A program made the position numbers and the translations under genes. This document shows, piece after piece, positions 1 to 33,314 of a stretch of DNA of 64,000 nt. The stretch is taken from IMG/VR virus record IMGVR_UViG_3300027759_000045, positions 186,001 to 250,000 of that record. One strand, written 5' to 3'. The notes beneath the pieces are model-generated. The model was not told the DNA's origin and searched no databases. It saw only the letters and a program-made list of their open reading frames with translations. Within the stretch, counting starts at the first letter, position 1. Each line of letters starts with the position of its first letter.

Positions 1-2117
1 ATCTTTGTTGGCACATAGGTGGGACTGTTTTGACCAAATGATGCAGGTGCTGGTGGTTTGCTCATGCCACCTTTGGGTAATCCGGCGTTGGCCAAACGGT
101 TGATGGCTCCACCTAGTACATTGCCCAGTATGCCACCACCCCAGGTTGTGCCAGGGCCTGTGGGATTGGTGCTTTGACGTTTGTTCAGCATGTTACTGTT
201 GTTGACATTGGGACTGCGAGCACGTATATAGTCCACATCTACAGGCAGGTCGTAGGTAAAAGACTGCACCACACAGGGATGTTCGTTGAATTGGTATTCA
301 CCCAGTCCGGTTAGATACACCAATGGAGGTGGTGTGCCACGTTGAGGATCTTGACCATAGAACATTTTTGTCACTGATTTAAAAAAGTGTATCACTGCCA
401 ACAGATATTCAGCCTCTGTTGTGCTTTGTGCAGTAAATGGACAACTCAGTGTGACTGGTTCAACTGAACTGCTTTGATAGTAGTAGCCTTTGTAGTTGCT
501 GTGTGTTAGATCATAACTTGCATAGTTGGCCTTGTACGAAGTGCCAATTGTGGGTGTGTAAGGAAATATAATTCCTGTGCCTTTTAGTGGCTGTAATATT
601 CCAGGTTCTGGGGCATTGTACAAATAATCAGCACCTGGTGCTAGTCGTAACTTAACACGCCAATCACCGTTGTTGGGATTTCTGCGCTGGTTGGCAATGG
701 TGTTCTGTGCTCGTGCCTTGTCCAAGGTGCCTTGTTTTATGGCAGCATTGAGATTGGTACGCTCTTCTTCTTCTTCAGGATTGGCGGCAAAGTCTCCAGA
801 AGGTTGTATTGTGACTGGATCGTCGGCACCCACAGCCTCGGGATTGAATACATTTTCAGTAACCCCGGCAGTTCCAGTTGGATCAAAAATATTTTCTGCA
901 TTTGGGTCAACTGTGGGTTCAACTTCTATGGCTTCTGTGGCTAGTATTCGTCGATTCTCTGCTTGTTCTAGTTCCAGTGCGTCTGCTTCCTCATCTGTCA
1001 TTACAGGCACATCTGTGGGTTCAAACTCTGTTGCTTCTTGTTCTGCTAGTGCTTGTTCTGCTTCGAATCTTGCCTGTTCAAATGGATCTGAGTTGGGCTC
1101 AACGTTGGCAGGATCAAATACTGATTCTTCTCCGGCGTTGATTGTCTCTCCTGGATCAAAAACATTCTCACCAGGATCAACTGTGGGGTCAACTTCTATG
1201 GCTTCTGTGGACAAGACACGACGATTTTCAGCTTGTTGTGCATCAAGTGCATCAGCTTCCTCATCTGTTAGAAATGCCACATCTCCAGGATCAAATTCTC
1301 GTGGTTCTCCGTCGAGTTCAAGTCCTGCTTCAAATCTTGCCTGTTCAAATGGATCCGAGTTAGGATCAACATTGTTGGGATCAAATACTGATTCTTCTCC
1401 GGCGTTGAATGTATTGCCTGGATCAAACACATTTTCAACTGCGTCAGCAGTTTTACCTGGTGCGTCGCCTCTGAAATACGTTCCACCGGTTTCTTCATTG
1501 ATTGCAAACCCGGGCTGTAGATTGCCATCGTCGTCATATGCAGGAAATTGACTTGGGTCACTTGCAGGATTTAATTCAGCAGCACTTTTTGGTACTGCTG
1601 TGCTGGCTGGTAAAACATCTTTTGTGCTTTTGAAAATTGAACCAATTGAACTTGCCAAGGATAACGCAGCCAATGGATTGGCTGCCGCTGCCCCCAGTGC
1701 CGCTGCCCCCAGTGTGTTTAGTAATCCAGATGAATTGCTTAATAAACTGCCCGAGCTGGGCGCTGGCGTTGACACATTGTATGGCAGTTGTTTGGCACCA
1801 GGATCAACCAGTGGACTTACGCCGCCATTACGATTGCCAGCTGATGCAACCGAGTCAGGAACACCCAGGCCGGTAGCTGGTGGAGTTTTTCCAGAGGCCG
1901 AAGTCACTGCCGCAGTGGCATTGTTTGTGGCCAACTGTGTAGCTTTTACTGCTGTGGTGGCAGCTTCAACTGCCGCCAGTGCCGCAGGAGACGGTGTTCG
2001 GCCGGCTTTTTGTGCCGCAATCACTGTGTTTTGAGCCGCTGCCAACGTTTTGATTGCCACAGCATTTTCACGTTGTGCTTGTGCGGCTTGTGCGGTTAGT
2101 GATGGGGTGGTTGCCAT
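1..2117 (-). CDS. Baseplate/tail-tube-related protein with long acidic repeat N-terminal region (runs off window start)
   Basis: Absent from the ORF track because there is no stop in the window. Hand-translated from ATG at 2117 (MATTPSLTAQAAQ...); the segments I read are open. C-terminal part DWRVKLRLAPG...IIFPYTP...HSNY...FTAQ...LLAVIHFFKSVTKMFYG...GTPPP...HPCVV resembles T4 gp48/gp54-like tube-fold proteins. TAAATA box upstream on the minus strand (~2137-2142). Confidence 0.6.
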   Translation of the reverse strand, partial: MATTPSLTAQAAQAQRENAVAIKTLAAAQNTVIAAQKAGRTPSPAALAAVEAATTAVKATQLATNNATAAVTSASGKTPPATGLGVPDSVASAGNRNGGVSPLVDPGAKQLPYNVSTPAPSSGSLLSNSSGLLNTLGAAALGAAAANPLAALSLASSIGSIFKSTKDVLPASTAVPKSAAELNPASDPSQFPAYDDDGNLQPGFAINEETGGTYFRGDAPGKTADAVENVFDPGNTFNAGEESVFDPNNVDPNSDPFEQARFEAGLELDGEPREFDPGDVAFLTDEEADALDAQQAENRRVLSTEAIEVDPTVDPGENVFDPGETINAGEESVFDPANVEPNSDPFEQARFEAEQALAEQEATEFEPTDVPVMTDEEADALELEQAENRRILATEAIEVEPTVDPNAENIFDPTGTAGVTENVFNPEAVGADDPVTIQPSGDFAANPEEEEERTNLNAAIKQGTLDKARAQNTIANQRRNPNNGDWRVKLRLAPGADYLYNAPEPGILQPLKGTGIIFPYTPTIGTSYKANYASYDLTHSNYKGYYYQSSSVEPVTLSCPFTAQSTTEAEYLLAVIHFFKSVTKMFYGQDPQRGTPPPLVYLTGLGEYQFNEHPCVVQSFTYDLPVDVDYIRARSPNVNNSNMLNKRQSTNPTGPGTTWGGGILGNVLGGAINRLANAGLPKGGMSKPPAPASFGQNSPTYVPTK
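879..1436 (-). repeat. Two ~90-aa acidic tandem repeats in the 1..2117 ORF
   Basis: EN(V/I)FDP at 1419-1436, 1152-1169 and 879-896 (spacing 267 and 273 nt). Unit contains NAGEESVFDP..NSDPFEQARFEA..TDEEADAL..QAENRR..TEAIEV.PTVDP. Confidence 0.85.
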
Positions 2118-2175
2118 AATGATTTTCCTATACAGTATTTATTGCAGAAATAAACTGGCTATATAATGATAAAGG

Positions 2176-2203
2176 TTGACAATGCAGTAAAAAGTGTTAT
2201 AAT
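2176..2203 (+). promoter_or_regulatory. Sigma70-type promoter upstream of the gp55-like gene
   Basis: TTGACA (2176-2181), 16 nt spacer, TATAAT (2198-2203) with extended TG; immediately followed by a TAAATA box. Confidence 0.75.
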
Positions 2204-2229
2204 AAATACATTACAAGGAGACACTGCCT

Positions 2230-3234: not shown

Positions 3235-4122
3235 ATGACCATTGCCATTGCGTTTAACGGCGGGGGGTACGGTACCTATCTTGAGTGGGTACTGACCACC
3301 CTTGCTACCGGCATTCCTATTACGGCTCCGTTTGGCATAAACGGAAACAGTCACCGGTTTTATGGAAATCATGCAAATGACATACATTCCTCTCTGTGGA
3401 AAGCAGTTGCCAGCAAAGAAAAGTCTTGTTTGTTTGTTCGACTCCACCCAAAAACACACCAACACGAAGTACTAGATAATAATTTAAATCAAATTTTGGA
3501 TGTTGCAGAAAAAGTTATCTATTTGTATCCTGATTCAGATTCAGTACTGTTAAATATAAACAACTTCTATTCAAAAATTTGGAAGGAGTGGTGGAGTGTG
3601 CGGTTATCAGATCCAGTATTTGCCGACAACTTGTACAGTAATTGGCCGGTCAATAGAGATACCCCGGTTACTCAGATACCAATCTGGATCAAGAGAGAAA
3701 TACTCAGTTTTAATTTGATGCCATCCTGGTTTGATCAAGTTGAATGGTATCACCCAGGCCGATGGCATCATGCACGATGTCAATTGGTATTGACCAACGA
3801 ACTGCTGTACAATTTTGAATCAACTATACAGAAATTACAGAAGTTTTGCAATTTGGAATTCAAAAAGAACATCGCGGATCTTGTGCCCCTGCATGATACT
3901 ATGCTATCACTACAACCGTATCTCTCCCAAGACCAGTTGTGTCACAACATAGTCAATCACACTTTGACCAATCAACTGTTTGAATGGAGAGACATTCCGT
4001 TACCTAGCCAAAGTTGGGTACAATGGAAATTGAGAAAGTTGGGCTACGAGATTCGTTGCTATGGGCTTGACATGTTCCCAACAAATAGTGTACAATTACG
4101 AGAACTACTATATCCTGTATGA
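3235..4122 (+). CDS. Hypothetical protein, possibly sulfotransferase/P-loop-like; paralog of 9682..10731
   Basis: N-terminal beta-strand plus GGGYGTYLEW loop; C-terminal L.MFPTN..L..LL shared with the 9682 ORF. Confidence 0.55.
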   Translation: MTIAIAFNGGGYGTYLEWVLTTLATGIPITAPFGINGNSHRFYGNHANDIHSSLWKAVASKEKSCLFVRLHPKTHQHEVLDNNLNQILDVAEKVIYLYPDSDSVLLNINNFYSKIWKEWWSVRLSDPVFADNLYSNWPVNRDTPVTQIPIWIKREILSFNLMPSWFDQVEWYHPGRWHHARCQLVLTNELLYNFESTIQKLQKFCNLEFKKNIADLVPLHDTMLSLQPYLSQDQLCHNIVNHTLTNQLFEWRDIPLPSQSWVQWKLRKLGYEIRCYGLDMFPTNSVQLRELLYPV

Positions 4123-5132
4123 ATCTATTTAAAAAAGCTGCGGTCTTTACTGATATCCATTTTGGCCTTAAGTCAAACAGTGTGTTACACAATGAAGACT
4201 GCTTGAACTTTGTGAAATGGGCCACTGCCAAAGCCAAAAGTGAAGGTTGTGAAACCTGTTTGTTCCTAGGCGACTGGCACAACAATCGATCAAGTCTAAA
4301 CATTGTCACACTAAACTACAGCCTGCGGGCACTGGAGCACATGAATGCTAATTTCGACCGTGTGTATTTTATCCCTGGTAATCACGACCTTTATTATCGT
4401 GACAAGCGCGATATACAGTCAGTTGAGTGGGCACGACACCTCCCTAATATTGAGATATGCAATGATTGGGTTTCTAGTGGCGACGTTGTTATCGCCCCTT
4501 GGTTGTGCGGAGATGATTATAAACGGATTCCTAAACTAAAAGGCAAATATATGTTTGGGCACTTTGAGTTGCCCGGCTACCTGATGAATGCCATGGTAGA
4601 AATGCCAGATCATGGTGAAGTACGTAGAGAAGACTTTGTAAACTTTGAGCATGTGTTTACCGGACACTTTCACAAACGACAGACCAAAAAGAATATTACC
4701 TACATCGGCAACTGTTTCCCGCATAACTACGCTGATGCCAGCGATGATGAACGCGGCATGATGATTCTAGAGTGGGGACAGGAGCCAGAGTTTCATGCCT
4801 GGCCTGCGCAGCCAAGATATCGTGTGTTAGGACTCAGCAATGTGATTGACAATGCTGCCACTGTGCTAGCAAAAGACATGCATGTTCGTGTACAATTAGA
4901 CATTGAGATCTCATACGAAGAAGCTAACTTTATCAAAGAAACTTATATTAAAGACTACGGGCTAAGAGAAATGGCTCTTATTCCAAACAAGGCAGCCGGA
5001 GTCGACACAGACATGGCGCCAGGCGAAATAAAGTTTGAATCAGTTGATCAAATTGTAACAGATCAACTCACTAACATTGAATCTGAATTCTACGATCCAA
5101 AACTGTTGTTAAAAATATATCAAAACTTATGA
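4119..5132 (+). CDS. gp47: Mre11/SbcD-like recombination nuclease subunit
   Basis: Metallophosphoesterase motifs DIHFG, LGDWH, GNHD, GHFE, GHFH. Confidence 0.93.
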   Translation: MNLFKKAAVFTDIHFGLKSNSVLHNEDCLNFVKWATAKAKSEGCETCLFLGDWHNNRSSLNIVTLNYSLRALEHMNANFDRVYFIPGNHDLYYRDKRDIQSVEWARHLPNIEICNDWVSSGDVVIAPWLCGDDYKRIPKLKGKYMFGHFELPGYLMNAMVEMPDHGEVRREDFVNFEHVFTGHFHKRQTKKNITYIGNCFPHNYADASDDERGMMILEWGQEPEFHAWPAQPRYRVLGLSNVIDNAATVLAKDMHVRVQLDIEISYEEANFIKETYIKDYGLREMALIPNKAAGVDTDMAPGEIKFESVDQIVTDQLTNIESEFYDPKLLLKIYQNL

Positions 5133-6706
5133 ATCAGTTTGACAAATCTATAGATCGTTTGCAAAAACTTTACGATACTGCGGGACCGTTTTATCTGTCA
5201 GAGTTTTATCAGGCCGACGGAGACAAAAAATTATATAATTTTCTAACTTCTGTTTATCAGATCGAATACACCACTAATTTTCGAATTCTAATAGTCCAAG
5301 ACTGCATAGATGTGTACGATTATGAAGACTTGCCAGGAAAAGCCATATGTACGTTACAACAATACGTTAGTCAGATAGATATTAGCAATTTTTTTGTTGT
5401 AGTTGTAACTGGCAATAAAAACATAGACACCGAACTAGCGCAAGTACAAAAGTTGTATTCTACCGATGATTGTAAAATGCAAAGTCATATTGTCAACAAT
5501 GTCAAATACACTGCAACTCATCAACAACAAGACACATTTTGTGTATTGCCATGGGTGCATTTATACGTTGGTCCCGACGGAAATGTGTTACCATGTTGTG
5601 TTGCTGATCAAAAATTTCCAATGGGTAATATCAATGATGCTTCGGTAGATGACATTTCAAAATCGTCTGTATTTAATCTTCTACGAACAAACATGTTGAC
5701 TGGCAAACGTAGTAAGGAATGCAACCGATGTTATATCCAAGAGGATGCTGGATTGATGAGTGCAAGACGATCTCACAACGCTCAATGGTCTCAAAAAAAA
5801 TTAAATATCGAATCTAGTGGAGTACTTAAAACGTTTGAGCCGGTTTATCTTGATATAAGATTGAACAATATCTGCAATCTCAAATGCAGAATGTGCAATG
5901 GCTATTTTAGCAGTGCTATTGCACAAGAAGAATCGAAGCTTTTTGGTAATCAACAATCATTAGATGCAAGCATGCAATCTGCACAAAAAGCACTAGCACT
6001 TGAAGAGATTATTAAATATTTGCCACAAGCAGAAAAAATATATTTTGCAGGTGGAGAACCATTGCTTGCTCTAGAACATTACAAAATATTAGATGCATTA
6101 ATTGAATGTGGCAATACTGACCTAGAAGTAACTTACAACACCAACTTTACTTCACTTGCATACAAAGATATTTCTGTCTTGGACTTATGGAAAAAATTCA
6201 GTCAAGTAAAAGTTGGAGCAAGTCTCGATGCAATAGGACGTGTAGCCGAATATGTCAGGCACGGAACCAAGTGGCCTACTATTGAATCTAACTTAGCATC
6301 TCTCAAACTACAGTGTCCTCATGTGAATTTTACCGTGACTTCAACTGTGGGATTTTTAAATATTTCCAGTTTAATTGAGTTGCAAACAACATGGCATGAA
6401 AACAAAATTTTAGATATTTCAAAATTCTCAATACAAGCTATGATAGGACCAGATCACTTGACGCTAACAGTATTGCCAACCGAGCACAAAGACCGACTTG
6501 ATTATAAAATAAAAAATCATATCAACTGGTGTTACCAAAATCAAGCAACTACTCTTGCGGCACAGTGGAAAAATGTGTTACAATACATGTGGAGTAAGGA
6601 CTCTTCGCAGTTTCTATCTGAATTTAAAAGATTAACTAGATTAATGGATCAATTTAGAAACGAATCATTAAGTGTAGTATTACCAGAGTTTTCTAGTTTT
6701 ATATGA
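5129..6706 (+). CDS. Radical SAM protein with N-terminal SPASM/twitch-like Fe-S domain
   Basis: CNLKCRMC (CxxxCxxC), FAGGEP, YNTN, ASLD; upstream FCVLPW...PCC...CNRC. Confidence 0.88.
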   Translation: MNQFDKSIDRLQKLYDTAGPFYLSEFYQADGDKKLYNFLTSVYQIEYTTNFRILIVQDCIDVYDYEDLPGKAICTLQQYVSQIDISNFFVVVVTGNKNIDTELAQVQKLYSTDDCKMQSHIVNNVKYTATHQQQDTFCVLPWVHLYVGPDGNVLPCCVADQKFPMGNINDASVDDISKSSVFNLLRTNMLTGKRSKECNRCYIQEDAGLMSARRSHNAQWSQKKLNIESSGVLKTFEPVYLDIRLNNICNLKCRMCNGYFSSAIAQEESKLFGNQQSLDASMQSAQKALALEEIIKYLPQAEKIYFAGGEPLLALEHYKILDALIECGNTDLEVTYNTNFTSLAYKDISVLDLWKKFSQVKVGASLDAIGRVAEYVRHGTKWPTIESNLASLKLQCPHVNFTVTSTVGFLNISSLIELQTTWHENKILDISKFSIQAMIGPDHLTLTVLPTEHKDRLDYKIKNHINWCYQNQATTLAAQWKNVLQYMWSKDSSQFLSEFKRLTRLMDQFRNESLSVVLPEFSSFI

Positions 6707-8784
6707 TCCATATTAAAAATTTAACTGTTAAGAACTTTATGAGTGTGGGCAATGCCACACAGGGTATTGACTTTGACCGTAACGACCTTACATTGGTATT
6801 AGGCGAAAACTTAGACTTAGGTGGAGATGGATCACGCAACGGAACTGGCAAGACCACAATCATCAATGCCCTAAGTTATGCCTTGTATGGCCAAGCACTT
6901 TCAAACATCCGCAAAGACAATCTAGTAAACAAAACCAACGGCAAGAACATGCTTGTGAGTTTGGACTTTGTTGTAAATGGTCAAGAGTACAAGATCGAAC
7001 GTGGTCGTAAACCAAATGTGCTACGATTTTATGTCAACAACGAAGCTCAAGCTGTCACAGATGAAGCACAAGGCGACAGTCGTGAAACACAAGATGCTAT
7101 CGAACGTGTGATGAATATGAGTCATGACATGTTCAAACATGTGTTGGCCTTGAACACCTACACTGAACCGTTCCTGAGTTTAAAAGCCAACGACCAACGC
7201 AACATCATTGAGCAGTTGTTGGGTATTACCCTACTAAGTGAACGTGCTGATGCCATCAAGGAACTCAATCGGCAGACCAAAGACAGTATCTCGCAAGAAG
7301 AATTCCGTATACGGGCAGAACAAGAAGCCAACAAACGCATTGAAGAACAGATTGAAAGTTTGAAACGCAGGCAAGTGCTCTGGCAGAAGAAGTACGACAG
7401 TGATGTAGCGTACCTTGTGGCACAATATGATGATCTAGCCAAGATCAACATCGATGTTGAATTGCTAGCTCACAAAGATCTAGCTGTATGGACCACACGT
7501 AAACAACAACAGGATGCGTATACTGCACTGGTTGGTCGCCAAACTGCTTGGCAACAAAAACAACACCGAGACATTGGCGAGCTGGAACTAACTCTTAACA
7601 CGCTCAGTCATATTGATATTCAAGCAGAACTACAAGCACATGCGGACTTGGCTGCTTACACACAAAAAGCCAAAGACATTGCCGATCTTGAAAAACTGAT
7701 TGCTAGGTGCGTTACAGACGAGGCAAAAGAACAAAAAGTTATTGATAAACTCCGAATCGAAATTGCGGAATTAAAAAATCACAAGTGTTATGCATGTGGA
7801 CAAGACTTCCACGATGCCAATCATGAAACAGTATTGGGCACAAAAGAGAAGGCATTGCAAGAAGCCTCTCTGCAAGCATTGAGTACTAATGGTCAGTGGA
7901 TGGAAAATACAGATGCATTACAAGCATTGGGTGCGCTGGGCACAAAACACACCACACACTACGATACAGAAACACAAGCCATTCGTCATTCAAGCGAACT
8001 AGAAAACATTCAGCACAAGATTGATGCCAAACGTGCGGAAACAGATCCTTACGCTGAACAACTGGCAGAGCATACACTGGTAGAGGTTGGTACACACCCT
8101 GTTACGCATTATGATACAGAAGCACAAGCTGTTGAGCATCGCAGTCGTATGAATACATTACTGACTCAGATTGCTACCAAAGGAGAAGAGAAGGATCCGT
8201 ACACTGAACAGATTGTTGAAATGCAACAACAGGCATTGCAGACTGTGAGTTACGATGCACTCAATGATCTCACAAGATTACAAGAACACCAAGACTTCTT
8301 GCTCAAACTGTTGACATCCAAAGATAGTTTTGTACGTAAAAAGATTATTGATCAGAATTTGAGTTATCTAAACGCACGACTGACGCACTACTTGGATCGT
8401 ATTGGCTTGCCACACACTGTGAAATTCCAAAACGACTTGAGTGTGATGATTGAAGAACTGGGTCGTGAACTAGACTTTGATAACTTGAGTCGTGGCGAAC
8501 GCAATCGTTTGATCTTATCAATGTCATGGGCATTCCGTGATGTATGGGAGAGTCTGTACAGCCCAATTAACTTGTTGTTCATTGATGAACTCATCGACAA
8601 TGGTTTAGATACTCAGGGTGTAGAGAACGCACTAGCACTGCTGAAGAAGATGAGCCGAGAGCGCCACAAGTCAATCTGGCTTGTGAGCCACAGAGATGAA
8701 CTAGCCGGACGTGTGGAGAACATTCTCAAAGTGATAAAAGAGAATGGTTTTACCAGTTACAATACCGACGTAGAACTTGCATAA
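6703..8784 (+). CDS. gp46: Rad50/SbcC-like recombination ATPase subunit
   Basis: KNFMSVG, Walker A NGTGKTT, zinc hook CYAC, signature LSRGE, Walker B LFIDE, H-loop LVSH. Confidence 0.95.
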   Translation: MIHIKNLTVKNFMSVGNATQGIDFDRNDLTLVLGENLDLGGDGSRNGTGKTTIINALSYALYGQALSNIRKDNLVNKTNGKNMLVSLDFVVNGQEYKIERGRKPNVLRFYVNNEAQAVTDEAQGDSRETQDAIERVMNMSHDMFKHVLALNTYTEPFLSLKANDQRNIIEQLLGITLLSERADAIKELNRQTKDSISQEEFRIRAEQEANKRIEEQIESLKRRQVLWQKKYDSDVAYLVAQYDDLAKINIDVELLAHKDLAVWTTRKQQQDAYTALVGRQTAWQQKQHRDIGELELTLNTLSHIDIQAELQAHADLAAYTQKAKDIADLEKLIARCVTDEAKEQKVIDKLRIEIAELKNHKCYACGQDFHDANHETVLGTKEKALQEASLQALSTNGQWMENTDALQALGALGTKHTTHYDTETQAIRHSSELENIQHKIDAKRAETDPYAEQLAEHTLVEVGTHPVTHYDTEAQAVEHRSRMNTLLTQIATKGEEKDPYTEQIVEMQQQALQTVSYDALNDLTRLQEHQDFLLKLLTSKDSFVRKKIIDQNLSYLNARLTHYLDRIGLPHTVKFQNDLSVMIEELGRELDFDNLSRGERNRLILSMSWAFRDVWESLYSPINLLFIDELIDNGLDTQGVENALALLKKMSRERHKSIWLVSHRDELAGRVENILKVIKENGFTSYNTDVELA

Positions 8785-8862
8785 TTTAGCATTGTAGGCA
8801 TATTTTTTAACCAATCAACTTTAAGGCATAACTATAACGCAAGGATAAATCGCACACAACAC

Positions 8863-9291
8863 ATGACATGGCTATATCAAGATACCCCAATTGAGACATT
8901 GCCCGAAGAGTGTGTTGGATTTGTTTACTTGATCACAAATAATCTTTCTGGACGCAAGTACATAGGCAAAAAATTAGCAAAATTTAGTAAAACAACTTAC
9001 AAAACTGTAACACAAAAGAACGGCACAAAGAAGAAGAAAAAGATACGCTCAAAGATCGACAGCGATTGGCGAGAGTACTATGGGTCAAGCCCAGAATTGA
9101 CTTTAGACATCGAAAAACTAGGCACCAAAAACTTCACCAGAGAAATACTTTATTACTGCGGATCAAAATCTGAATGTAGTTATGTCGAAGCAAGAGAACA
9201 ATTTGCAAGACAAGTATTAGAGTCACAAGATTATTACAACGGCCATATTCAAGTTCGTGTGCATGGCTCACACATCATAAACAAAATTTAA
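8863..9291 (+). CDS. Small GIY-YIG family nuclease (catalytic domain only)
   Basis: GFVY...KYIG, DWREYYGS, F.REIL, E and YYN motifs. 142 aa, no NUMOD/HTH tail, Lys-rich insertion. Confidence 0.85.
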   Translation: MTWLYQDTPIETLPEECVGFVYLITNNLSGRKYIGKKLAKFSKTTYKTVTQKNGTKKKKKIRSKIDSDWREYYGSSPELTLDIEKLGTKNFTREILYYCGSKSECSYVEAREQFARQVLESQDYYNGHIQVRVHGSHIINKI

Positions 9292-9299
9292 CAGGCAAC

Positions 9300-9687
9300 A
9301 ATTACGACTCTGTGTTGAGTGTTTGACTCAACCCCATTGAAGAACGGTGAGATACCCGGGCTGGACTTGGGCGTCAAAGGCAATTGCTAACTTAAGGCAA
9401 CAAATGGTCGGGGCTATGTGAAAAAGATACAACCCCAGCTCGTAGGACTTGGATCTATATCGGGTCACTAGGGTTCCGTTGATATGTGAAGCTTGAGTAG
9501 GGGGTACCGGTCAACCGCCTCCGCGTTGGAAACAACAATCTCATTATGATAGATGACTGCTATACTCAGATAATGGCGTTTTTTGTTCACCGTGCATACG
9601 GTGAACTATGACCACGTAATCTAGATAATAGCTAAGAAGAAAAATGTGATTGAGCTCAAGCGAAATCACAGATTAGCGTAGCTAATC
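9300..9687. ncRNA. Candidate large structured non-coding RNA (family not recognised)
   Basis: ~390 nt with no ORF in the track, and many helices including a perfect 9-bp hairpin (9585-9606), a GAAA tetraloop hairpin (9525-9536) and long-range complementarities. See findings. Confidence 0.55.
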
Positions 9688-9690
9688 TTT
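9671..9690. terminator. Hairpin between convergent units, possibly a terminator
   Basis: GATTAGC-GTA-GCTAATC followed by TTT; overlaps the stop of the minus-strand ORF. Confidence 0.5.
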
Positions 9691-10731
9691 CTTAATCAAC
9701 TGATGTATGTTGGGTTCTAACAACTTGTGTAGGTCTTGTGTATTGGTAGGAAATTTTTCCAATTGCCAATTTTTTAAATTAAGATTATGTCTATAAAGCA
9801 ATGCATTTTGTATGATTACTTCTTTGTAGAAATCTAAATTAAATCTTTCAAGACTCAGATATTCGTTATGCACAATAGCATTGATAATGCGATCAAAGTG
9901 TCTTGAAAAGTATTGATCATGTTTTAATCTCCAAACGTTATATATCAACTGCCATTGGCTAATCTGTGTTGAACTAATTGAAATATCAATAAAATGTAAT
10001 ATTTCAGTTGCTACAGAAAATAGATCATTCCATACATCATCTGTGGTGTACAATAAATGTGGTAATTTTTTATTGATGGCAGAATTGTACAACAGTTGGT
10101 TGTGTGGAGTGTAGTCGTAGAACATCAGTGCTAATTTTTCTCTGTTGTCCCATATGGTATCATTGAATTTATCATCCATGCCTGTAAAAAATGTTTCTTT
10201 GTATGTTTCCCATGAGGCATCAATGCTGTCAACACCAACACCATTGCAATTCATTGGATATCGGTCGTTGTAGATAGCATTTAATTGATCCGTTGACTGA
10301 TACTCAAATTGAACCAATGGTAGATCATGTTGTTGAATCCAATCTACTAGCTTTTTTCTATCTTCAAAAATATAATCTATGGCAAGTTGTTGTTGGGCAA
10401 CAGTTGCCTCTGCTATTGTTATTGCAAACAGTTCTTGTAATGCCTGAGTTGTTGACATGCTATTAACATAAAAACACACAACTGGTAATTCACTGTTAAA
10501 ATTCACTGCCTTGCTGTATTTTTGTTTGGTCTCTTCAAACCCCCAGGACAGTAAAATTTTTTGTTGATGAAAATTTTTAGCAGTAGTGTCTGGATTAACT
10601 ACACAATCAATTAACTGATTATCATCAATTAGGTACTGTGTTTGTCCAGATAAAAAATACAAACTCCAGATAACAAAATGTCCACCGGTGTTGTGAGGAA
10701 AAAATAAAAAAACAAATTTAGTTGAATTCAT
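9682..10731 (-). CDS. Hypothetical protein, paralog of 3235..4122 (AT-rich accessory gene)
   Basis: Likely start MNSTKF at 10731, overlapping the upstream stop. TGGHFVIW loop; C-terminal LEKFPTNTQDLHKLL. Confidence 0.6.
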   Translation of the reverse strand: MNSTKFVFLFFPHNTGGHFVIWSLYFLSGQTQYLIDDNQLIDCVVNPDTTAKNFHQQKILLSWGFEETKQKYSKAVNFNSELPVVCFYVNSMSTTQALQELFAITIAEATVAQQQLAIDYIFEDRKKLVDWIQQHDLPLVQFEYQSTDQLNAIYNDRYPMNCNGVGVDSIDASWETYKETFFTGMDDKFNDTIWDNREKLALMFYDYTPHNQLLYNSAINKKLPHLLYTTDDVWNDLFSVATEILHFIDISISSTQISQWQLIYNVWRLKHDQYFSRHFDRIINAIVHNEYLSLERFNLDFYKEVIIQNALLYRHNLNLKNWQLEKFPTNTQDLHKLLEPNIHQLIKKD

Positions 10732-11056
10732 CTGGCCAATCACGGAACAGTGCATGTTGTATCGTGCCGGAAACAAACTGATTGAAACTTCGATGTTTGG
10801 TTTCTAGTTCACCTTCAAGCGGAGCAACACGTCGAAATGCTGAATCCATTTGAGCCATGTCCTTGAACTCCATCAGTATCATCCATTCGGGCATGTCTGC
10901 AATACTTCTGAATCCCATCTTACATCTAGTAATGCGATAGTCTTGCATCTTGCCTTCTGATTTCAAATGATCAAAGAAACTCTTCATGCCGTTGACCCAG
11001 TCTAAGTCTGAGATGTCGCCTTCTTTGTCTGCCCAAATTGTGTAAATGTCTGCCAT
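10718..11056 (-). CDS. Small dimeric alpha/beta-barrel-like protein (DUF6614-like)
   Basis: DIYTIWAD...ISDLDW...HLKSEGK...RITRCKMG...EW.ILMEF..MAQMDSAF...H; family assignment from recall. Confidence 0.5.
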   Translation of the reverse strand: MADIYTIWADKEGDISDLDWVNGMKSFFDHLKSEGKMQDYRITRCKMGFRSIADMPEWMILMEFKDMAQMDSAFRRVAPLEGELETKHRSFNQFVSGTIQHALFRDWPDEFN

Positions 11057-17300: not shown

Positions 17301-17522
17301 ATGATTTTAAACGAACTTTACCAGCGTGAACCCGAAGGCTATCAAGATGTCGCACAGGACAACAGCCAGCCTCAAAAGAATCAACTGCGTAAAACTCGTT
17401 TGACACTACGACAGTTGAGCAAGCTACGTCAGATGAACGATGTACGAACTTACGAATACAAAGAGAAACTCAAAGATATTCGCAAACAGTATGCTCCCCC
17501 GGCCGCCCCTCCTGGCCTTTGA
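17301..17522 (+). CDS. Small head-module hypothetical protein
   Basis: 73 aa, between portal and core genes; basic RKTRLTLRQLSKLR; preceded by TAAATA. Confidence 0.7.
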   Translation: MILNELYQREPEGYQDVAQDNSQPQKNQLRKTRLTLRQLSKLRQMNDVRTYEYKEKLKDIRKQYAPPAAPPGL

Positions 17523-17630
17523 CCATGTCATAAATTAGTCAAAACTACCAGTTTTGACGTCTAAATATGCTCAGTTTACTGCTTTTGTGTAAGTAGTAAA
17601 CATGAGCCATAACCTTTTGGAGGAAACAAT

Positions 17631-25081: not shown

Positions 25082-25180
25082 TAAATACTTGTCAACGCAA
25101 TTGGGCGTTTTATGCGGAAGAATAAACCCTACCGCGTAGTGGCTAGAACCCACATCGGACTTCTTTAAGGAGAAAACAAA
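25082..25180 (+). promoter_or_regulatory. Late promoter plus structured 5' leader
   Basis: TAAATA at 25082-25087, three consecutive hairpins, SD AAGGAG at 25167-25172. Confidence 0.55.
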
Positions 25181-26002
25181 ATGGGACGTCCTCTTAAAAT
25201 TAAAAAAATTACCGAAGCTAGTTACAACTCTAGTACCGGTGCAAACCCTGGTGTTGATATTGGTTTCAATGCATTAACAAGTTTAACAGCACCGGTGTAT
25301 CCAAGTAGTACTTGGACTGGCACAGAATATCTTGGTGTAGTTGGCGGTGTACAACCCGCAACCGTTGCCAGTGCAGCTTATCCAATTGTCAAATGCGAAG
25401 TAAATATTACCAACAGCTATAGTGGTCAAACACCTGGATTGATTATTCGCCAAAAAGGTTCACGCAAGTTTATGGTTGCAACCACAGCTGGTATTGATCC
25501 TGCCAACACTGTAATTGGCGGCACACCCACAGTGGCCTTGCGTATTCGTGTAGTTGGTGACACCAACTGGACAGCCATGGGTGCTCCTGAAGGTTACGGC
25601 ATAGGCACAATCTTTACTCCTACAGCAGCCTCTGCAGGCGGCACCACCGGCACAGCGCAAGAAGTTGGTACATGTGTGTTACAAAATGATGTAACTCCCA
25701 CAGCCGGCAACATGAGTATCAGTTATTTCAGCAACGACTCAACTGAAACAGCAGTCAGCAAGTTGACCAACAAGTTCTTACAGAACTTTGCTGGAGGTTG
25801 TGCAGGCGGCGGAGCCAACACCGGTGACGTTTGGAATCCAACTCTAGTTGTTGACAACGTAACATTGGTTGACAACTTCTTCAGCGACGAAGGCACAACA
25901 GCCAAGTCTGGTGCTGAAATTGACACCTGGGGCACAAACGGTTCAGAGCAATTGGCAACAGGTGCACTGGATCTAGCAATTGTAGAGAACTACACAAGCT
26001 AA
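25181..26002 (+). CDS. Putative virion structural protein
   Basis: MGRPLK start, IIRQKGSRKF motif, Thr/Gly-rich, strong SD, followed by a terminator. Confidence 0.65.
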   Translation: MGRPLKIKKITEASYNSSTGANPGVDIGFNALTSLTAPVYPSSTWTGTEYLGVVGGVQPATVASAAYPIVKCEVNITNSYSGQTPGLIIRQKGSRKFMVATTAGIDPANTVIGGTPTVALRIRVVGDTNWTAMGAPEGYGIGTIFTPTAASAGGTTGTAQEVGTCVLQNDVTPTAGNMSISYFSNDSTETAVSKLTNKFLQNFAGGCAGGGANTGDVWNPTLVVDNVTLVDNFFSDEGTTAKSGAEIDTWGTNGSEQLATGALDLAIVENYTS

Positions 26003-33105: not shown

Positions 33106-33314
33106 TCTGCACTGAAATAACGCATAATGTTAGATGTTTTTACCCGATTGGTAAATAATTATACATCTAATAAACACCCAACGCAATAAATTTATTTCAC
33201 ACTGATTGTTAAACTGAGCAGTGTGCTTTGTCACGACTTTGGTAAATACATTATAAATTTAGATTGCTGACATGGTTGTTGGCGATTTTTGAAGTTAAAA
33301 CAGGGGAATTACAA

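What the first reader, a model, noticed from the sequence alone, without database searches (positions are those of the whole stretch)
8863..9687. ~390-nt highly structured, apparently pseudoknotted non-coding element directly behind a minimal GIY-YIG nuclease gene
Seen: this is the largest gene-free gap in an otherwise packed window, and almost all of it can pair. Local helices: GTTGAGT/ACTCAAC (9314-20/9326-32), CCATT/AATGG (9334-38/9403-07), GACTTGG/TCGGGTC with G-U pairs (9446-52/9460-66), TGAGTA/TACTCA (9494-99/9563-68) enclosing CGG-TCAA-CCG and GTTG-GAAA-CAAC, a perfect GTTCACCGT-GCAT-ACGGTGAAC (9585-9606) and TGTGATT/AATCACA (9645-51/9664-70). Crossing long-range pairings: AACGG/CCGTT (9343-47/9476-80), TGAGAT/ATCTCA (9348-53/9538-43), and hairpin loop ATCTAT (9453-58) with ATAGAT (9549-54). 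G-U pairs and a GNRA loop favour an RNA read from the + strand. I could not match it to group I/II introns, tmRNA, RNase P, SRP or tRNA. The upstream GIY-YIG protein lacks a DNA-recognition tail and has a Lys-rich insertion. Inference: a new large ncRNA. It could be an RNP partner or guide for the nuclease (analogous to OMEGA nuclease+RNA units), a ribozyme, or an R-loop replication primer (G5 run at 9500-9504, next to gp46/47). Short 5-6 bp matches can arise by chance, and similar small GIY-YIG genes are common in T4-like phages, so the link to the nuclease is unproven.
Basis: partly seen in the sequence, partly recalled or inferred. Interest (0 to 1): 0.85.

Follow-up and report, generated by a model that had tools for sequence, protein, structure and literature searches.

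The report
Conserved pseudoknotted jumbo-phage RNA behind nuclease gene
The gap holds a real, strongly conserved, pseudoknotted ~390-nt phage RNA; its 3' two-thirds are shared with RNAs that begin with the uncharacterised Rfam motif Polynucleobacter-1, it carries an unexplained pair of identical short sequences, and its function and its tie to the neighbouring nuclease are still unknown.

Summary
The 390-nt gap (9292-9681) is the largest internal ORF-free stretch of the window. It encodes a + strand structured RNA (about 9304-9690). The RNA follows the same small GIY-YIG gene in more than 200 IMG/VR contigs of PA5oct-like aquatic jumbo phages and ends in an intrinsic terminator. Compensatory changes support 15 helices, including two pseudoknots. 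No Rfam family hits the window. In divergent relatives the same gene is followed by a full Polynucleobacter-1 motif (RF01718, described in 2010, function unknown) plus the same 3' domain. A profile built only from those relatives hits window 9476-9697 at E 3e-27. The RNA is therefore a sister variant of a known, uncharacterised family, with a different 5' domain. A new observation: two direct 7-8-mers (9568-9575 and 9623-9630) flank a conserved hairpin and change together by identity across lineages. No complementary partner lies within 1.2 kb. The nuclease family occurs in 483 isolate phages, and none of the three loci I inspected has the RNA. Unrelated genes can sit between nuclease and RNA, and the protein does not co-vary with it. 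A guide or RNP role is therefore unproven.

The parts
8863..9291 (+). Small GIY-YIG (SegE-type domain only) protein gene, 142 aa, PHROG 447. Homologue of cyanophage P-SSM2 PSSM2_218.
   Evidence: Pfam PF19835, E 1e-32, covering residues 3-129. phrog_447, E 2e-37. BLASTP to PSSM2_218, E 2e-19. dN/dS about 0.11. AF2 model with pLDDT 93.7; the Lys-rich segment forms a long beta-hairpin at residues 40-66.
9304..9442 (+). 5' domain of the RNA (window type). H1 9306-08/9373-75 closes a junction that holds H2 9314-20/9326-32 and H3 9333-36/9368-71 with H4 9342-47/9356-61. Then come H5 9384-87/9397-9400 (invariant loop UAACUUAAG) and H6 9410-13/9433-36.
   Evidence: Compensatory changes in every helix. 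The covariance model R1 built from this domain finds class A and class C loci but no Polynucleobacter-1-type loci.
9443..9470 (+). Hairpin H7 (9443-52/9460-70, with A9467 bulged). Its loop 9453-9459 forms pseudoknot PK1.
   Evidence: 98.8% canonical pairs and 3 pairs with compensatory changes. Pair table from RNAalifold.
9549..9554 (+). 3' strand of PK1; it pairs with the H7 loop 9453-58.
   Evidence: 9455:9552 is CG in 48 and UA in 48. Class B keeps the same pairing with a different sequence, UUAGCG x CGCUAA (read by eye).
9471..9543 (+). Near-invariant core. PK2 GUUGAU 9478-83 pairs with GUCAAC 9510-15. H9 9494-97/9540-43 encloses H10 9500-04/9518-22 and the GNRA hairpin H11 9525-28/9533-36.
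   Evidence: Invariant block in 37 sequences. Helix statistics. PK2 co-varies between classes: UGAU/GUCA, UGUG/CACA, CGUC/GACG. A profile built from class B alone hits 9476-9697 at E 2.8e-27.
9565..9576 (+). R1: CUC followed by the variable 7-8-mer X (AGAUAAUG in the window). A conserved UGAC lies at 9554-57.
   Evidence: Identity covariation with R2.
9585..9606 (+). Hairpin H13 between the two repeats (9-bp stem, GCAU loop), followed by the conserved UAUGACC.
   Evidence: 96% canonical pairs in class A. The stem sequence is replaced in a compensatory way in classes B and C, for example UUGCCCG...CGGGCAA.
9620..9631 (+). R2: UCU followed by the same 7-8-mer X (AGAUAAUA in the window). A conserved UGAC lies at 9609-12.
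   Evidence: p1 (9568/9623) is identical in 186 of 191 unique loci. p5 (9572/9627) is identical in 188 of 191. No other column within -900 to +260 nt of the core exceeds MI 0.33.
9645..9670 (+). Hairpin H14 with the conserved loop GAGC...AGCGAA.
   Evidence: All 7 pairs show compensatory changes. Conserved in classes B and C.
9670..9695 (+). Intrinsic terminator (stem 9671-77/9681-87 plus a U-rich tail). It overlaps the stop codon of the convergent ORF.
   Evidence: Terminator scan. Compensatory changes in 5 of 7 pairs. Depth of metatranscriptome contigs falls to zero after about 9672 in three of the four runs.

Best explanation
The gap encodes a structured non-coding RNA of about 390 nt. It is made as the last part of the rightward gp47-gp46-GIY-YIG transcription unit of a PA5oct-like aquatic jumbo phage, and it ends at its own intrinsic terminator.

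The RNA is modular. The 5' domain (9304-9442) is one of at least two alternative types; the other type is the Rfam motif Polynucleobacter-1. The 3' domain (9443-9695) is common to both types. It is a double-pseudoknotted, nearly invariant core, followed by the module 'UGAC-N10-X / hairpin / UGAC-N10-X', a second hairpin and the terminator.

Shown here: the RNA is real, it is read from the + strand, the helices and pseudoknots exist, the 3' domain is homologous to that of Polynucleobacter-1-bearing RNAs, the synteny holds, and the two X copies are coupled by identity.

Inferred (about 35% for this mechanism): the RNA acts in trans as a scaffold, probably protein-bound, whose specificity lies in the lineage-specific 7-8-mer X. 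X is displayed twice as single strand and base-pairs with a nucleic acid encoded outside the locus, in the phage or in the host. The adjacent nuclease is a candidate protein partner, but that is not demonstrated.
For: Conserved right behind the nuclease gene in the loci first fetched and in 209 unique loci. Covariation. + strand: G-U 703 versus A-C 104 cells and the terminator. Non-coding. Purifying selection: the RNA is 72-93% identical while dS of the neighbouring gene is about 1.6. RNA-library contigs cover 8857-9640 and stop near the terminator. Relatives carry RF01718 at 88-122 bits plus the same 3' domain. A class-B-only profile hits the window at E 2.8e-27. Twin X motif: MI 0.93 and 0.97 bit, 96-98% identity, at least 14 different X sequences that are always the same in both copies. 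The coupling holds on a tree: 11 independent contrasts, about 10 in the same direction and 0 opposite, p 0.002. No complementary partner within -900 to +260 nt.
Against: No partner of X was found, and the window itself shows no excess of sites complementary to X. Seven or eight nucleotides give little specificity. Transcription is shown only by unstranded contigs from metatranscriptomes; these could contain DNA and are confounded by cross-mapping of relatives. RNA ends were not mapped. A purely cis role as a 3' UTR is not excluded. Coupling by identity could also arise from templated copying or from an unusual homo-pairing rather than from a shared partner.
Confidence: 0.5

Rival explanations
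1. The RNA is the obligate partner (guide or scaffold) of the domain-only GIY-YIG nuclease, which lacks a DNA-recognition domain. X supplies target recognition, with one copy per nuclease monomer or per DNA strand.
For: Same strand and same order in essentially all loci; 177 of 209 are directly adjacent. The protein is only the catalytic domain plus a conserved basic beta-hairpin. X is a lineage-specific, duplicated short sequence. In one lineage a different small nuclease (PF24608, PD-(D/E)xK) occupies the same position upstream of the RNA.
Against: The nuclease family, at the same length, is present in 483 isolate phages (Kyanoviridae, Melnitz, phiM12, ACP17). None of the three loci I inspected has this RNA; there the gene follows nrdA-nrdB or precedes tRNA genes. 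Unrelated ORFs of 0.7-2 kb are inserted between nuclease and RNA in 32 of 209 loci. No codon of the nuclease gene co-varies with X. X also sits in the RNA gene's own DNA, so self-targeting would need a further rule. Seven or eight nucleotides is short for a guide.
Confidence: 0.15
2. A cis-acting 3' UTR element. It would be a self-cleaving or RNase-resistant structure that processes or stabilises the gp46/GIY-YIG mRNA or tunes expression of the nuclease, with no function in trans.
For: It starts about 13 nt after the stop codon of whatever ORF lies upstream and ends at the operon terminator. It has a complex, invariant, pseudoknotted core of the kind seen in ribozymes.
Against: No known self-cleaving ribozyme family matches, even at E up to 10. 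Simple stabilisers are not this large or this conserved. The identity-coupled twin motif has no role in this model. The element stays when the upstream gene is replaced.
Confidence: 0.2
3. The linkage is selfish, not functional. The small nucleases are free-standing homing-type endonucleases that settle next to, and target, a highly conserved RNA gene, as T4 Seg and Mob genes settle next to conserved genes. The RNA's function is independent of them. This rival concerns only the linkage and is compatible with the best explanation.
For: The Pfam family is SegE-type. A second, unrelated nuclease type sits at the same place in L149, and another GIY-YIG endonuclease-like ORF in L176. The spot is a hot spot for inserted genes.
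Against: The GIY-YIG gene is nearly universal at the locus rather than sporadic. It is under strong purifying selection over saturated synonymous divergence (dN/dS about 0.11, dS about 1.6). It is more conserved than gp46. It lacks the DNA-binding domain of Seg enzymes.
Confidence: 0.15
4. An RNA template with terminal direct repeats. A polymerase copies the roughly 55-nt unit between R2 and R1 and re-aligns on the identical X, giving tandem-repeat products, as telomerase RNA and the DRT2/DRT10 ncRNAs do.
For: Direct repeats whose identity, not their sequence, is conserved. They flank a unit of variable length (46-79 nt), with a helix (PK1) just 5' of R1 that could act as a template boundary. 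Abstracts on DRT10 and DRT2 describe template-jumping synthesis on ncRNAs (listings).
Against: No reverse transcriptase was found among the neighbouring genes scanned; they are T4-like structural genes. The unit contains stop codons in all frames on both strands (read by eye). Selection acts on the hairpin structure of the unit, through compensatory changes, rather than on its sequence.
Confidence: 0.07
5. A DNA-level element (replication origin with an R-loop primer, or a recombination site), or the decayed C-terminal domain of the nuclease gene.
For: It lies next to gp46/gp47. It contains a perfect 9-bp palindrome flanked by direct repeats.
Against: The strong G-U versus A-C asymmetry and the pseudoknot covariation point to a single-stranded + strand molecule. 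Only 12% of indels are multiples of 3 and there are stops in all frames. Full-length relatives of the protein have the same length everywhere. X is not a genome-wide motif.
Confidence: 0.03

Closest known systems
Polynucleobacter-1 RNA motif (Rfam RF01718; Weinberg et al. 2010, PMC2864571)
   Same: Same genomic place: directly downstream of the PSSM2_218-like small GIY-YIG gene in aquatic phage sequences. RNAs that carry this motif continue into the same 3' domain as the window RNA: PK1, the core GGUAC.G....ACCGCC, UGAC-N10-X, hairpin, UGAC-N10-X, second hairpin and terminator. Function is unknown for both.
   Different: The Rfam model (141 nt) covers only the 5' domain of those RNAs and does not hit the window at E up to 10. 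A covariance model of the window-type 5' domain does not find Polynucleobacter-1 loci. The 5' domains are therefore different, or related beyond detection. Neither Rfam nor the 2010 description, as far as I read it, covers the shared 3' domain or the twin X motif.
GOLLD and ROOL (large ornate RNAs of phages and prophages)
   Same: Large, complex, strongly conserved RNAs of unknown function in phage genomes. GOLLD was also found in lake metagenomes.
   Different: No sequence or structure match. The window RNA is much smaller (about 390 nt against roughly 580-800 nt; sizes from my own knowledge). Nothing here shows multimer formation.
omega-RNA / HEARO and other nuclease-plus-RNA units (TnpB, IscB)
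   Same: A conserved structured RNA sits next to the 3' end of a small nuclease gene and contains a short lineage-specific sequence.
   Different: The nuclease is a GIY-YIG, not RuvC or HNH. There are no transposon ends. The variable element is 7-8 nt, internal and duplicated, not a terminal guide of 16 nt or more. There is no Rfam HEARO hit. The nuclease family exists widely without the RNA.
Template RNAs with terminal repeats (telomerase RNA, DRT2 and DRT10 ncRNAs)
   Same: Short direct repeats are kept identical on both sides of a defined unit, next to a large scaffold.
   Different: No reverse transcriptase is associated with it. The unit is a structured hairpin.
T4 Seg endonucleases and T4 endonuclease II (for the protein)
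   Same: SegE-type GIY-YIG domain. In Kyanoviridae the gene sits after nrdA-nrdB, the place where, from my recollection of the T4 map, denA lies.
   Different: There is no C-terminal DNA-binding domain. No sequence hit to any solved GIY-YIG structure at E up to 1, apart from a marginal one to 3r3p, and no Foldseek hit at E 0.001 or better. It carries a long basic beta-hairpin insertion.

Membership tests
Rfam RF01718 Polynucleobacter-1 RNA | Covariance-model score at or above the gathering threshold (37 bits) | tested here: not met
   No match in window 9150-9800 at E up to 10 or at the gathering threshold. Relatives L044, L053, L073 and L080 score 88-122 bits.
Rfam RF01718 Polynucleobacter-1 RNA | Lies downstream of genes of the PSSM2_218 / GOS11034 family (supplement of Weinberg 2010) | tested here: met
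   The window GIY-YIG versus PSSM2_218 gives 36% identity and E 2e-19.
Rfam RF01718 Polynucleobacter-1 RNA | Homology of the 5' domain architecture | tested here: not met
   Model R1, built from 59 window-type 5' domains, finds class A and class C loci (57-158 bits) but none of about 30 Polynucleobacter-1-type loci at E up to 1.
Extended family (RNAs that share the 3' domain with Polynucleobacter-1-bearing RNAs) | Significant profile match of the 3' domain, with PK1, the core, and the R1-hairpin-R2 module in the same order | tested here: met
   nhmmer profile from 86 class-B sequences only: window 9476-9697, E 2.8e-27. Alignment A2.
Group I intron | Match to group I models, flanking exons, and a P3-P7 core | tested here: not met
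   No Rfam hit at E up to 10. gp46 is complete, with Walker B and H-loop before its stop codon. The downstream gene is convergent, so there is no 3' exon.
tRNA / tmRNA | Detection by ARAGORN | tested here: not met
   No gene found in the whole window.
omega-RNA / HEARO-type guide RNA | RuvC or HNH nuclease partner, transposon ends, terminal guide, Rfam match | tested here: not met
   The partner is a GIY-YIG. There is no Rfam match. The variable element is internal, 7-8 nt and duplicated.
RT-template ncRNA (telomerase / DRT type) | Direct repeats that bound a template | tested here: met
   R1 and R2 are coupled by identity, with spacing of 46-79 nt.
RT-template ncRNA (telomerase / DRT type) | Associated reverse transcriptase | tested here: not met
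   None among 15 neighbouring ORFs scanned with Pfam. The rest of the 347-kb genome was not scanned.
SegE-type GIY-YIG domain (protein) | Pfam PF19835 score above the curated cut-off | tested here: met
   113.5 bits against a cut-off of 25, covering profile positions 1-123 of 123.
Seg-type homing endonuclease (protein) | C-terminal DNA-binding domain and sporadic distribution | tested here: not met
   The protein has 142 aa and the domain fills residues 3-129. The gene is nearly universal at the locus and has dN/dS about 0.11.

The most novel reading that the evidence does not exclude
The twin, lineage-specific 7-8-mers are the programmable element of a new kind of phage RNA system. Either it is an RNA-directed nuclease, in which a catalytic-domain-only GIY-YIG enzyme is aimed by the RNA, or it is an RNA template or decoy whose two identical sites engage one co-evolving nucleic-acid partner. 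The shared 3' domain would be its scaffold, and the alternative 5' domains would be exchangeable accessory modules.
Probability: 0.12. Interest if true: 0.9.

Novelty: new variant of a known kind. Interest (0 to 1): 0.62.

Why it matters
A 141-nt motif catalogued in 2010 as a possible cis-regulator turns out to be one of two alternative 5' domains of a much larger phage RNA. That RNA is double-pseudoknotted, is found in more than 200 viral contigs, and is under stronger constraint than the synonymous sites of the neighbouring gene. The window gives the second variant of the 5' domain. With its relatives it also yields a covariation-backed structure for the whole RNA.

The identity-coupled repeats are a rare kind of evolutionary signal. 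They point to a specificity element or to templated copying, and so they give a concrete handle for experiments. If the adjacent domain-only GIY-YIG nuclease proves to work with the RNA, it would be a new class of RNA-dependent nuclease. If it does not, this is still one of the larger orphan structured RNAs of jumbo phages.

Tried and rejected
1. Rfam at the gathering threshold and at E up to 10 on the window: nothing in the gap. ARAGORN: nothing.
2. BLASTN of the window RNA and of a class-B RNA against 50,697 isolate phages: no match.
3. Scan of genome contigs with a degenerate core pattern: only chance hits in GC-rich genomes, none with RNA flanks or a GIY-YIG gene.
4. Mini-ORF reading of the modules ([A/G]UG-AC...AGA-UAA). 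Rejected because the distance from UGAC to X varies by single nucleotides (alignments).
5. Translational-bypass reading. There is no ORF through R1 and there are stops in all frames.
6. X as a promoter or a genome-wide motif. AGATAAT occurs 8 times on the + strand against 7.6 expected, and TGAC-N9-12-GATAAT occurs only at R1 and R2 on that strand. The sigma-70-like hit at 9546-9574 is no better than shuffles. Variants such as AGCTGA are not -10-like.
7. An internal partner for X. The MI scan over the RNA and over -900 to +260 nt found none. Complementarity scans gave only weak G/U-rich matches near 9408 and 9460, without covariation.
8. Complement of X elsewhere in the window: no more sites than expected. 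The freshwater-2 RNA has no complement.
9. MITE or target-site-duplication origin of R1 and R2. Rejected because the two copies change together after the lineages split.
10. Palindromy of R2 (AUCUAGAU) as the constraint. It is lost in the GCAU, AGGU and AGCUGA variants.
11. T4 EndoII or I-TevI as structural relatives of the protein: no sequence hit and no Foldseek hit.
12. Literature searches for a GIY-YIG plus RNA system, or for this RNA under another name: only the 2010 catalogue.
Full report
LOCUS. The window is part of IMG/VR contig UViG_3300027759_000045, which is 346,856 bp long. Around the finding lie gp47/SbcD (4119-5132), a radical-SAM gene (5129-6706) and gp46/Rad50-like (6703-8784), all on the + strand. 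They are followed by a 142-aa ORF (8863-9291), a 390-nt gap, and a convergent 364-aa ORF without any family match (9682-10776). T4-type baseplate, portal, prohead protease and major capsid genes follow. By gp46 the nearest cultured phages are PA5oct-like Pseudomonas jumbo phages, at 44% identity. In PA5oct the gp55-gp47-gp46 operon runs straight into convergent genes, with neither the small ORF nor the gap. The gap is the largest internal ORF-free stretch of the window.

WHAT IS IT RELATED TO? No Rfam family matches the window RNA. Some loci with the same protein gave only partial BLAST hits to the 3' part of the gap. Reading them and running Rfam on them showed a complete Polynucleobacter-1 motif (RF01718; 88-122 bits) directly after the protein gene. 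It is followed by about 150 nt and then the same elements as in the window: a hairpin whose loop pairs downstream (PK1, with a different sequence), the core GGUAC.G....ACCGCC, UGAC-N10-X, a hairpin, UGAC-N10-X, a second hairpin with the loop GAGC...AGCGAA, and a terminator. A profile built only from 86 such class-B sequences hits window 9476-9697 at E 2.8e-27. In the other direction, a covariance model of the window-type 5' domain (A3, R1) finds class A and a third class C, but no class-B locus. The family is therefore modular, with two alternative 5' domains on one common 3' domain. The 2010 catalogue describes Polynucleobacter-1 as a likely RNA of unknown role from Burkholderiales and fresh or estuarine water. 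[quoted passage not shown] PSSM2_218 is a 145-aa homologue of the window protein (E 2e-19).

THE PROTEIN. It is a SegE-type GIY-YIG domain and nothing else (PF19835, residues 3-129), and it belongs to PHROG 447, which is misnamed 'NAD synthetase'. Homologues of the same length occur in 483 isolate phages: T4-like cyanophages, Methylophilales phage Melnitz, Sinorhizobium phiM12-like phages, Acidovorax ACP17 and others. In the two Kyanoviridae loci where nrdA-nrdB is annotated (S-SM2 and C48C1) the gene follows those genes. In S-SM2 it precedes a tRNA cluster. In Melnitz and C48C1 the short gap behind it bears no resemblance to the RNA. Within the RNA-bearing lineage the gene is under strong purifying selection (dN/dS about 0.11, with dS about 1.6) and is more conserved than gp46. 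An AlphaFold model is confident (pLDDT 93.7). It shows the order beta-beta-alpha-beta-alpha, which I take to be the GIY-YIG topology. The Lys-rich segment forms a long basic beta-hairpin at residues 40-66. P-SSM2 has an equally basic segment at the same place, so the insertion is a trait of the family and not a mark of RNA binding. No solved structure matches by sequence or by fold.

HOW TIGHT IS THE LINK? I took 209 unique loci with at least 700 nt upstream, most of them fetched through the RNA alone. In 177 of them the GIY-YIG ORF ends 150-300 nt before the core, which means directly before the RNA. The other 32 have another ORF in between: SGNH/GDSL-like (judged from the N-terminal motif), relatives of the window's ORF 9682-10776, a larger GIY-YIG endonuclease-like ORF, and others. 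In those I checked the GIY-YIG gene lies 0.7-2 kb further upstream. L149 has no GIY-YIG gene in the 5.7 kb between gp46 and the RNA. Instead, a PF24608 PD-(D/E)xK endonuclease gene abuts the RNA. The order and the strand are therefore constant, but direct adjacency is not required, and the nuclease type can differ.

THE UNEXPECTED FEATURE. Two direct repeats flank the conserved hairpin 9585-9606: R1 (9565-9576, CUC-AGAUAAUG-G) and R2 (9620-9631, UCU-AGAUAAUA-G). Each is preceded at a fixed distance by UGAC. The 7-8-mer X differs between lineages: AGAUAAU, GGAUAAU, AGAUGAU, GGAUGAU, AGAUGAA, GCAUAAU, AGGUAAU, AGGAUAAU, ACAGAAU, UGGAAA, ACAUGAAG, AGCUGA, AGAUGAG, AGAUCAA and AGACGAA. It is the same in both copies of a given RNA. 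In 192 unique loci, position 9568 equals 9623 in 186 of 191 and position 9572 equals 9627 in 188 of 191 (MI 0.93 and 0.97 bit). No other column from 900 nt upstream, which includes the whole nuclease gene and its leader, to 260 nt downstream exceeds 0.33 bit. I built a tree without these columns. On it the first position changes about 20 times at each site. In 11 independent contrasts R2 follows R1 about 10 times and never goes the other way (p 0.002). The spacing varies from 46 to 79 nt. The flanks differ systematically (CUC against UCU, G against A after X), so this is not simple homogenisation of a duplication. I could exclude mini-ORFs, translational bypass, promoters, target-site duplication, palindromy and an internal complementary strand (see 'tried and rejected'). 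What remains is either a shared partner encoded elsewhere or some form of templated copying or homo-pairing.

MOST LIKELY MECHANISM. The RNA is transcribed as the end of the operon: it begins about 13 nt after the stop codon of whatever ORF precedes it, and it ends at the terminator. I judge it most likely to be a trans-acting scaffold RNA, probably protein-bound, that presents X twice to a nucleic-acid partner. I put this at about 35% for the mechanism, and near certainty for 'a real structured RNA of this family'.

VERDICT. The interpretation 'new large ncRNA' has to be tempered. The RNA is a new variant (a new 5' domain, not detected by Rfam) of a family whose other branch has been in Rfam since 2010 with unknown function and with the same gene neighbour. 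The full extent of the RNA, its double pseudoknot, its modular 5' end and the identity-coupled twin motif appear to be undescribed; this rests on literature searches limited to open-access text.

Noticed in passing
window 25093-25183 (+): Match to Rfam RF02980 freshwater-2 RNA (68.6 bits, E 2e-8). It sits in the 147-nt gap just upstream of ORF 25181-26002 and contains that ORF's Shine-Dalgarno sequence and start codon.
   Followed up: partly
window 5129-6706 (+); L149 3231-7355: A radical-SAM protein gene is inserted between gp47 and gp46, with overlapping stop and start codons. In L149 at least one radical-SAM gene (Pfam) and two further Cys-rich ORFs that look radical-SAM/SPASM-like by eye lie between gp46 and the RNA. 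This may point to a DNA or peptide modification module in this variable region.
   Followed up: partly
window 9682-10776 (-); L034, L035, L105, L148, L186, L202, L115: Relatives of the 364-aa ORF without any family match (26-32% identity) lie either convergent downstream of the RNA, as in the window, or on the same strand between the GIY-YIG gene and the RNA. It behaves as a mobile or shuffled accessory gene of this locus.
   Followed up: partly
L149 2293-2805 (-): A 170-aa PF24608 'phage putative PDDEXK endonuclease' gene occupies the position directly upstream of the RNA. No GIY-YIG gene lies between gp46 and the RNA in this locus.
   Followed up: yes
window 8863-9291 (protein residues 40-66): In the AlphaFold model the Lys-rich insertion is a long, confidently predicted basic beta-hairpin. 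The whole model finds no PDB match by Foldseek, even though Pfam assigns it clearly to the GIY-YIG family.
   Followed up: partly
window 9488 with 9588:9603: In the combined alignment, position 9488 in the invariant core tracks the H13 base pair 9588:9603 (with 9588: GC in 106, AU in 50, UA in 12). This may be a tertiary contact, or only a difference between classes.
   Followed up: no
window 2035-2229, 33106-33263, 17407-17630: Other ORF-free stretches of 158-224 nt. None matched an Rfam family at the gathering threshold.
   Followed up: no
L009 and L120 (insert after the core), L130, L365, L375: Some relatives carry AU-rich insertions of 40-150 nt in place of the GNRA hairpin H11 (9525-9536). 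H11 is therefore a tolerated expansion site of the RNA.
   Followed up: no
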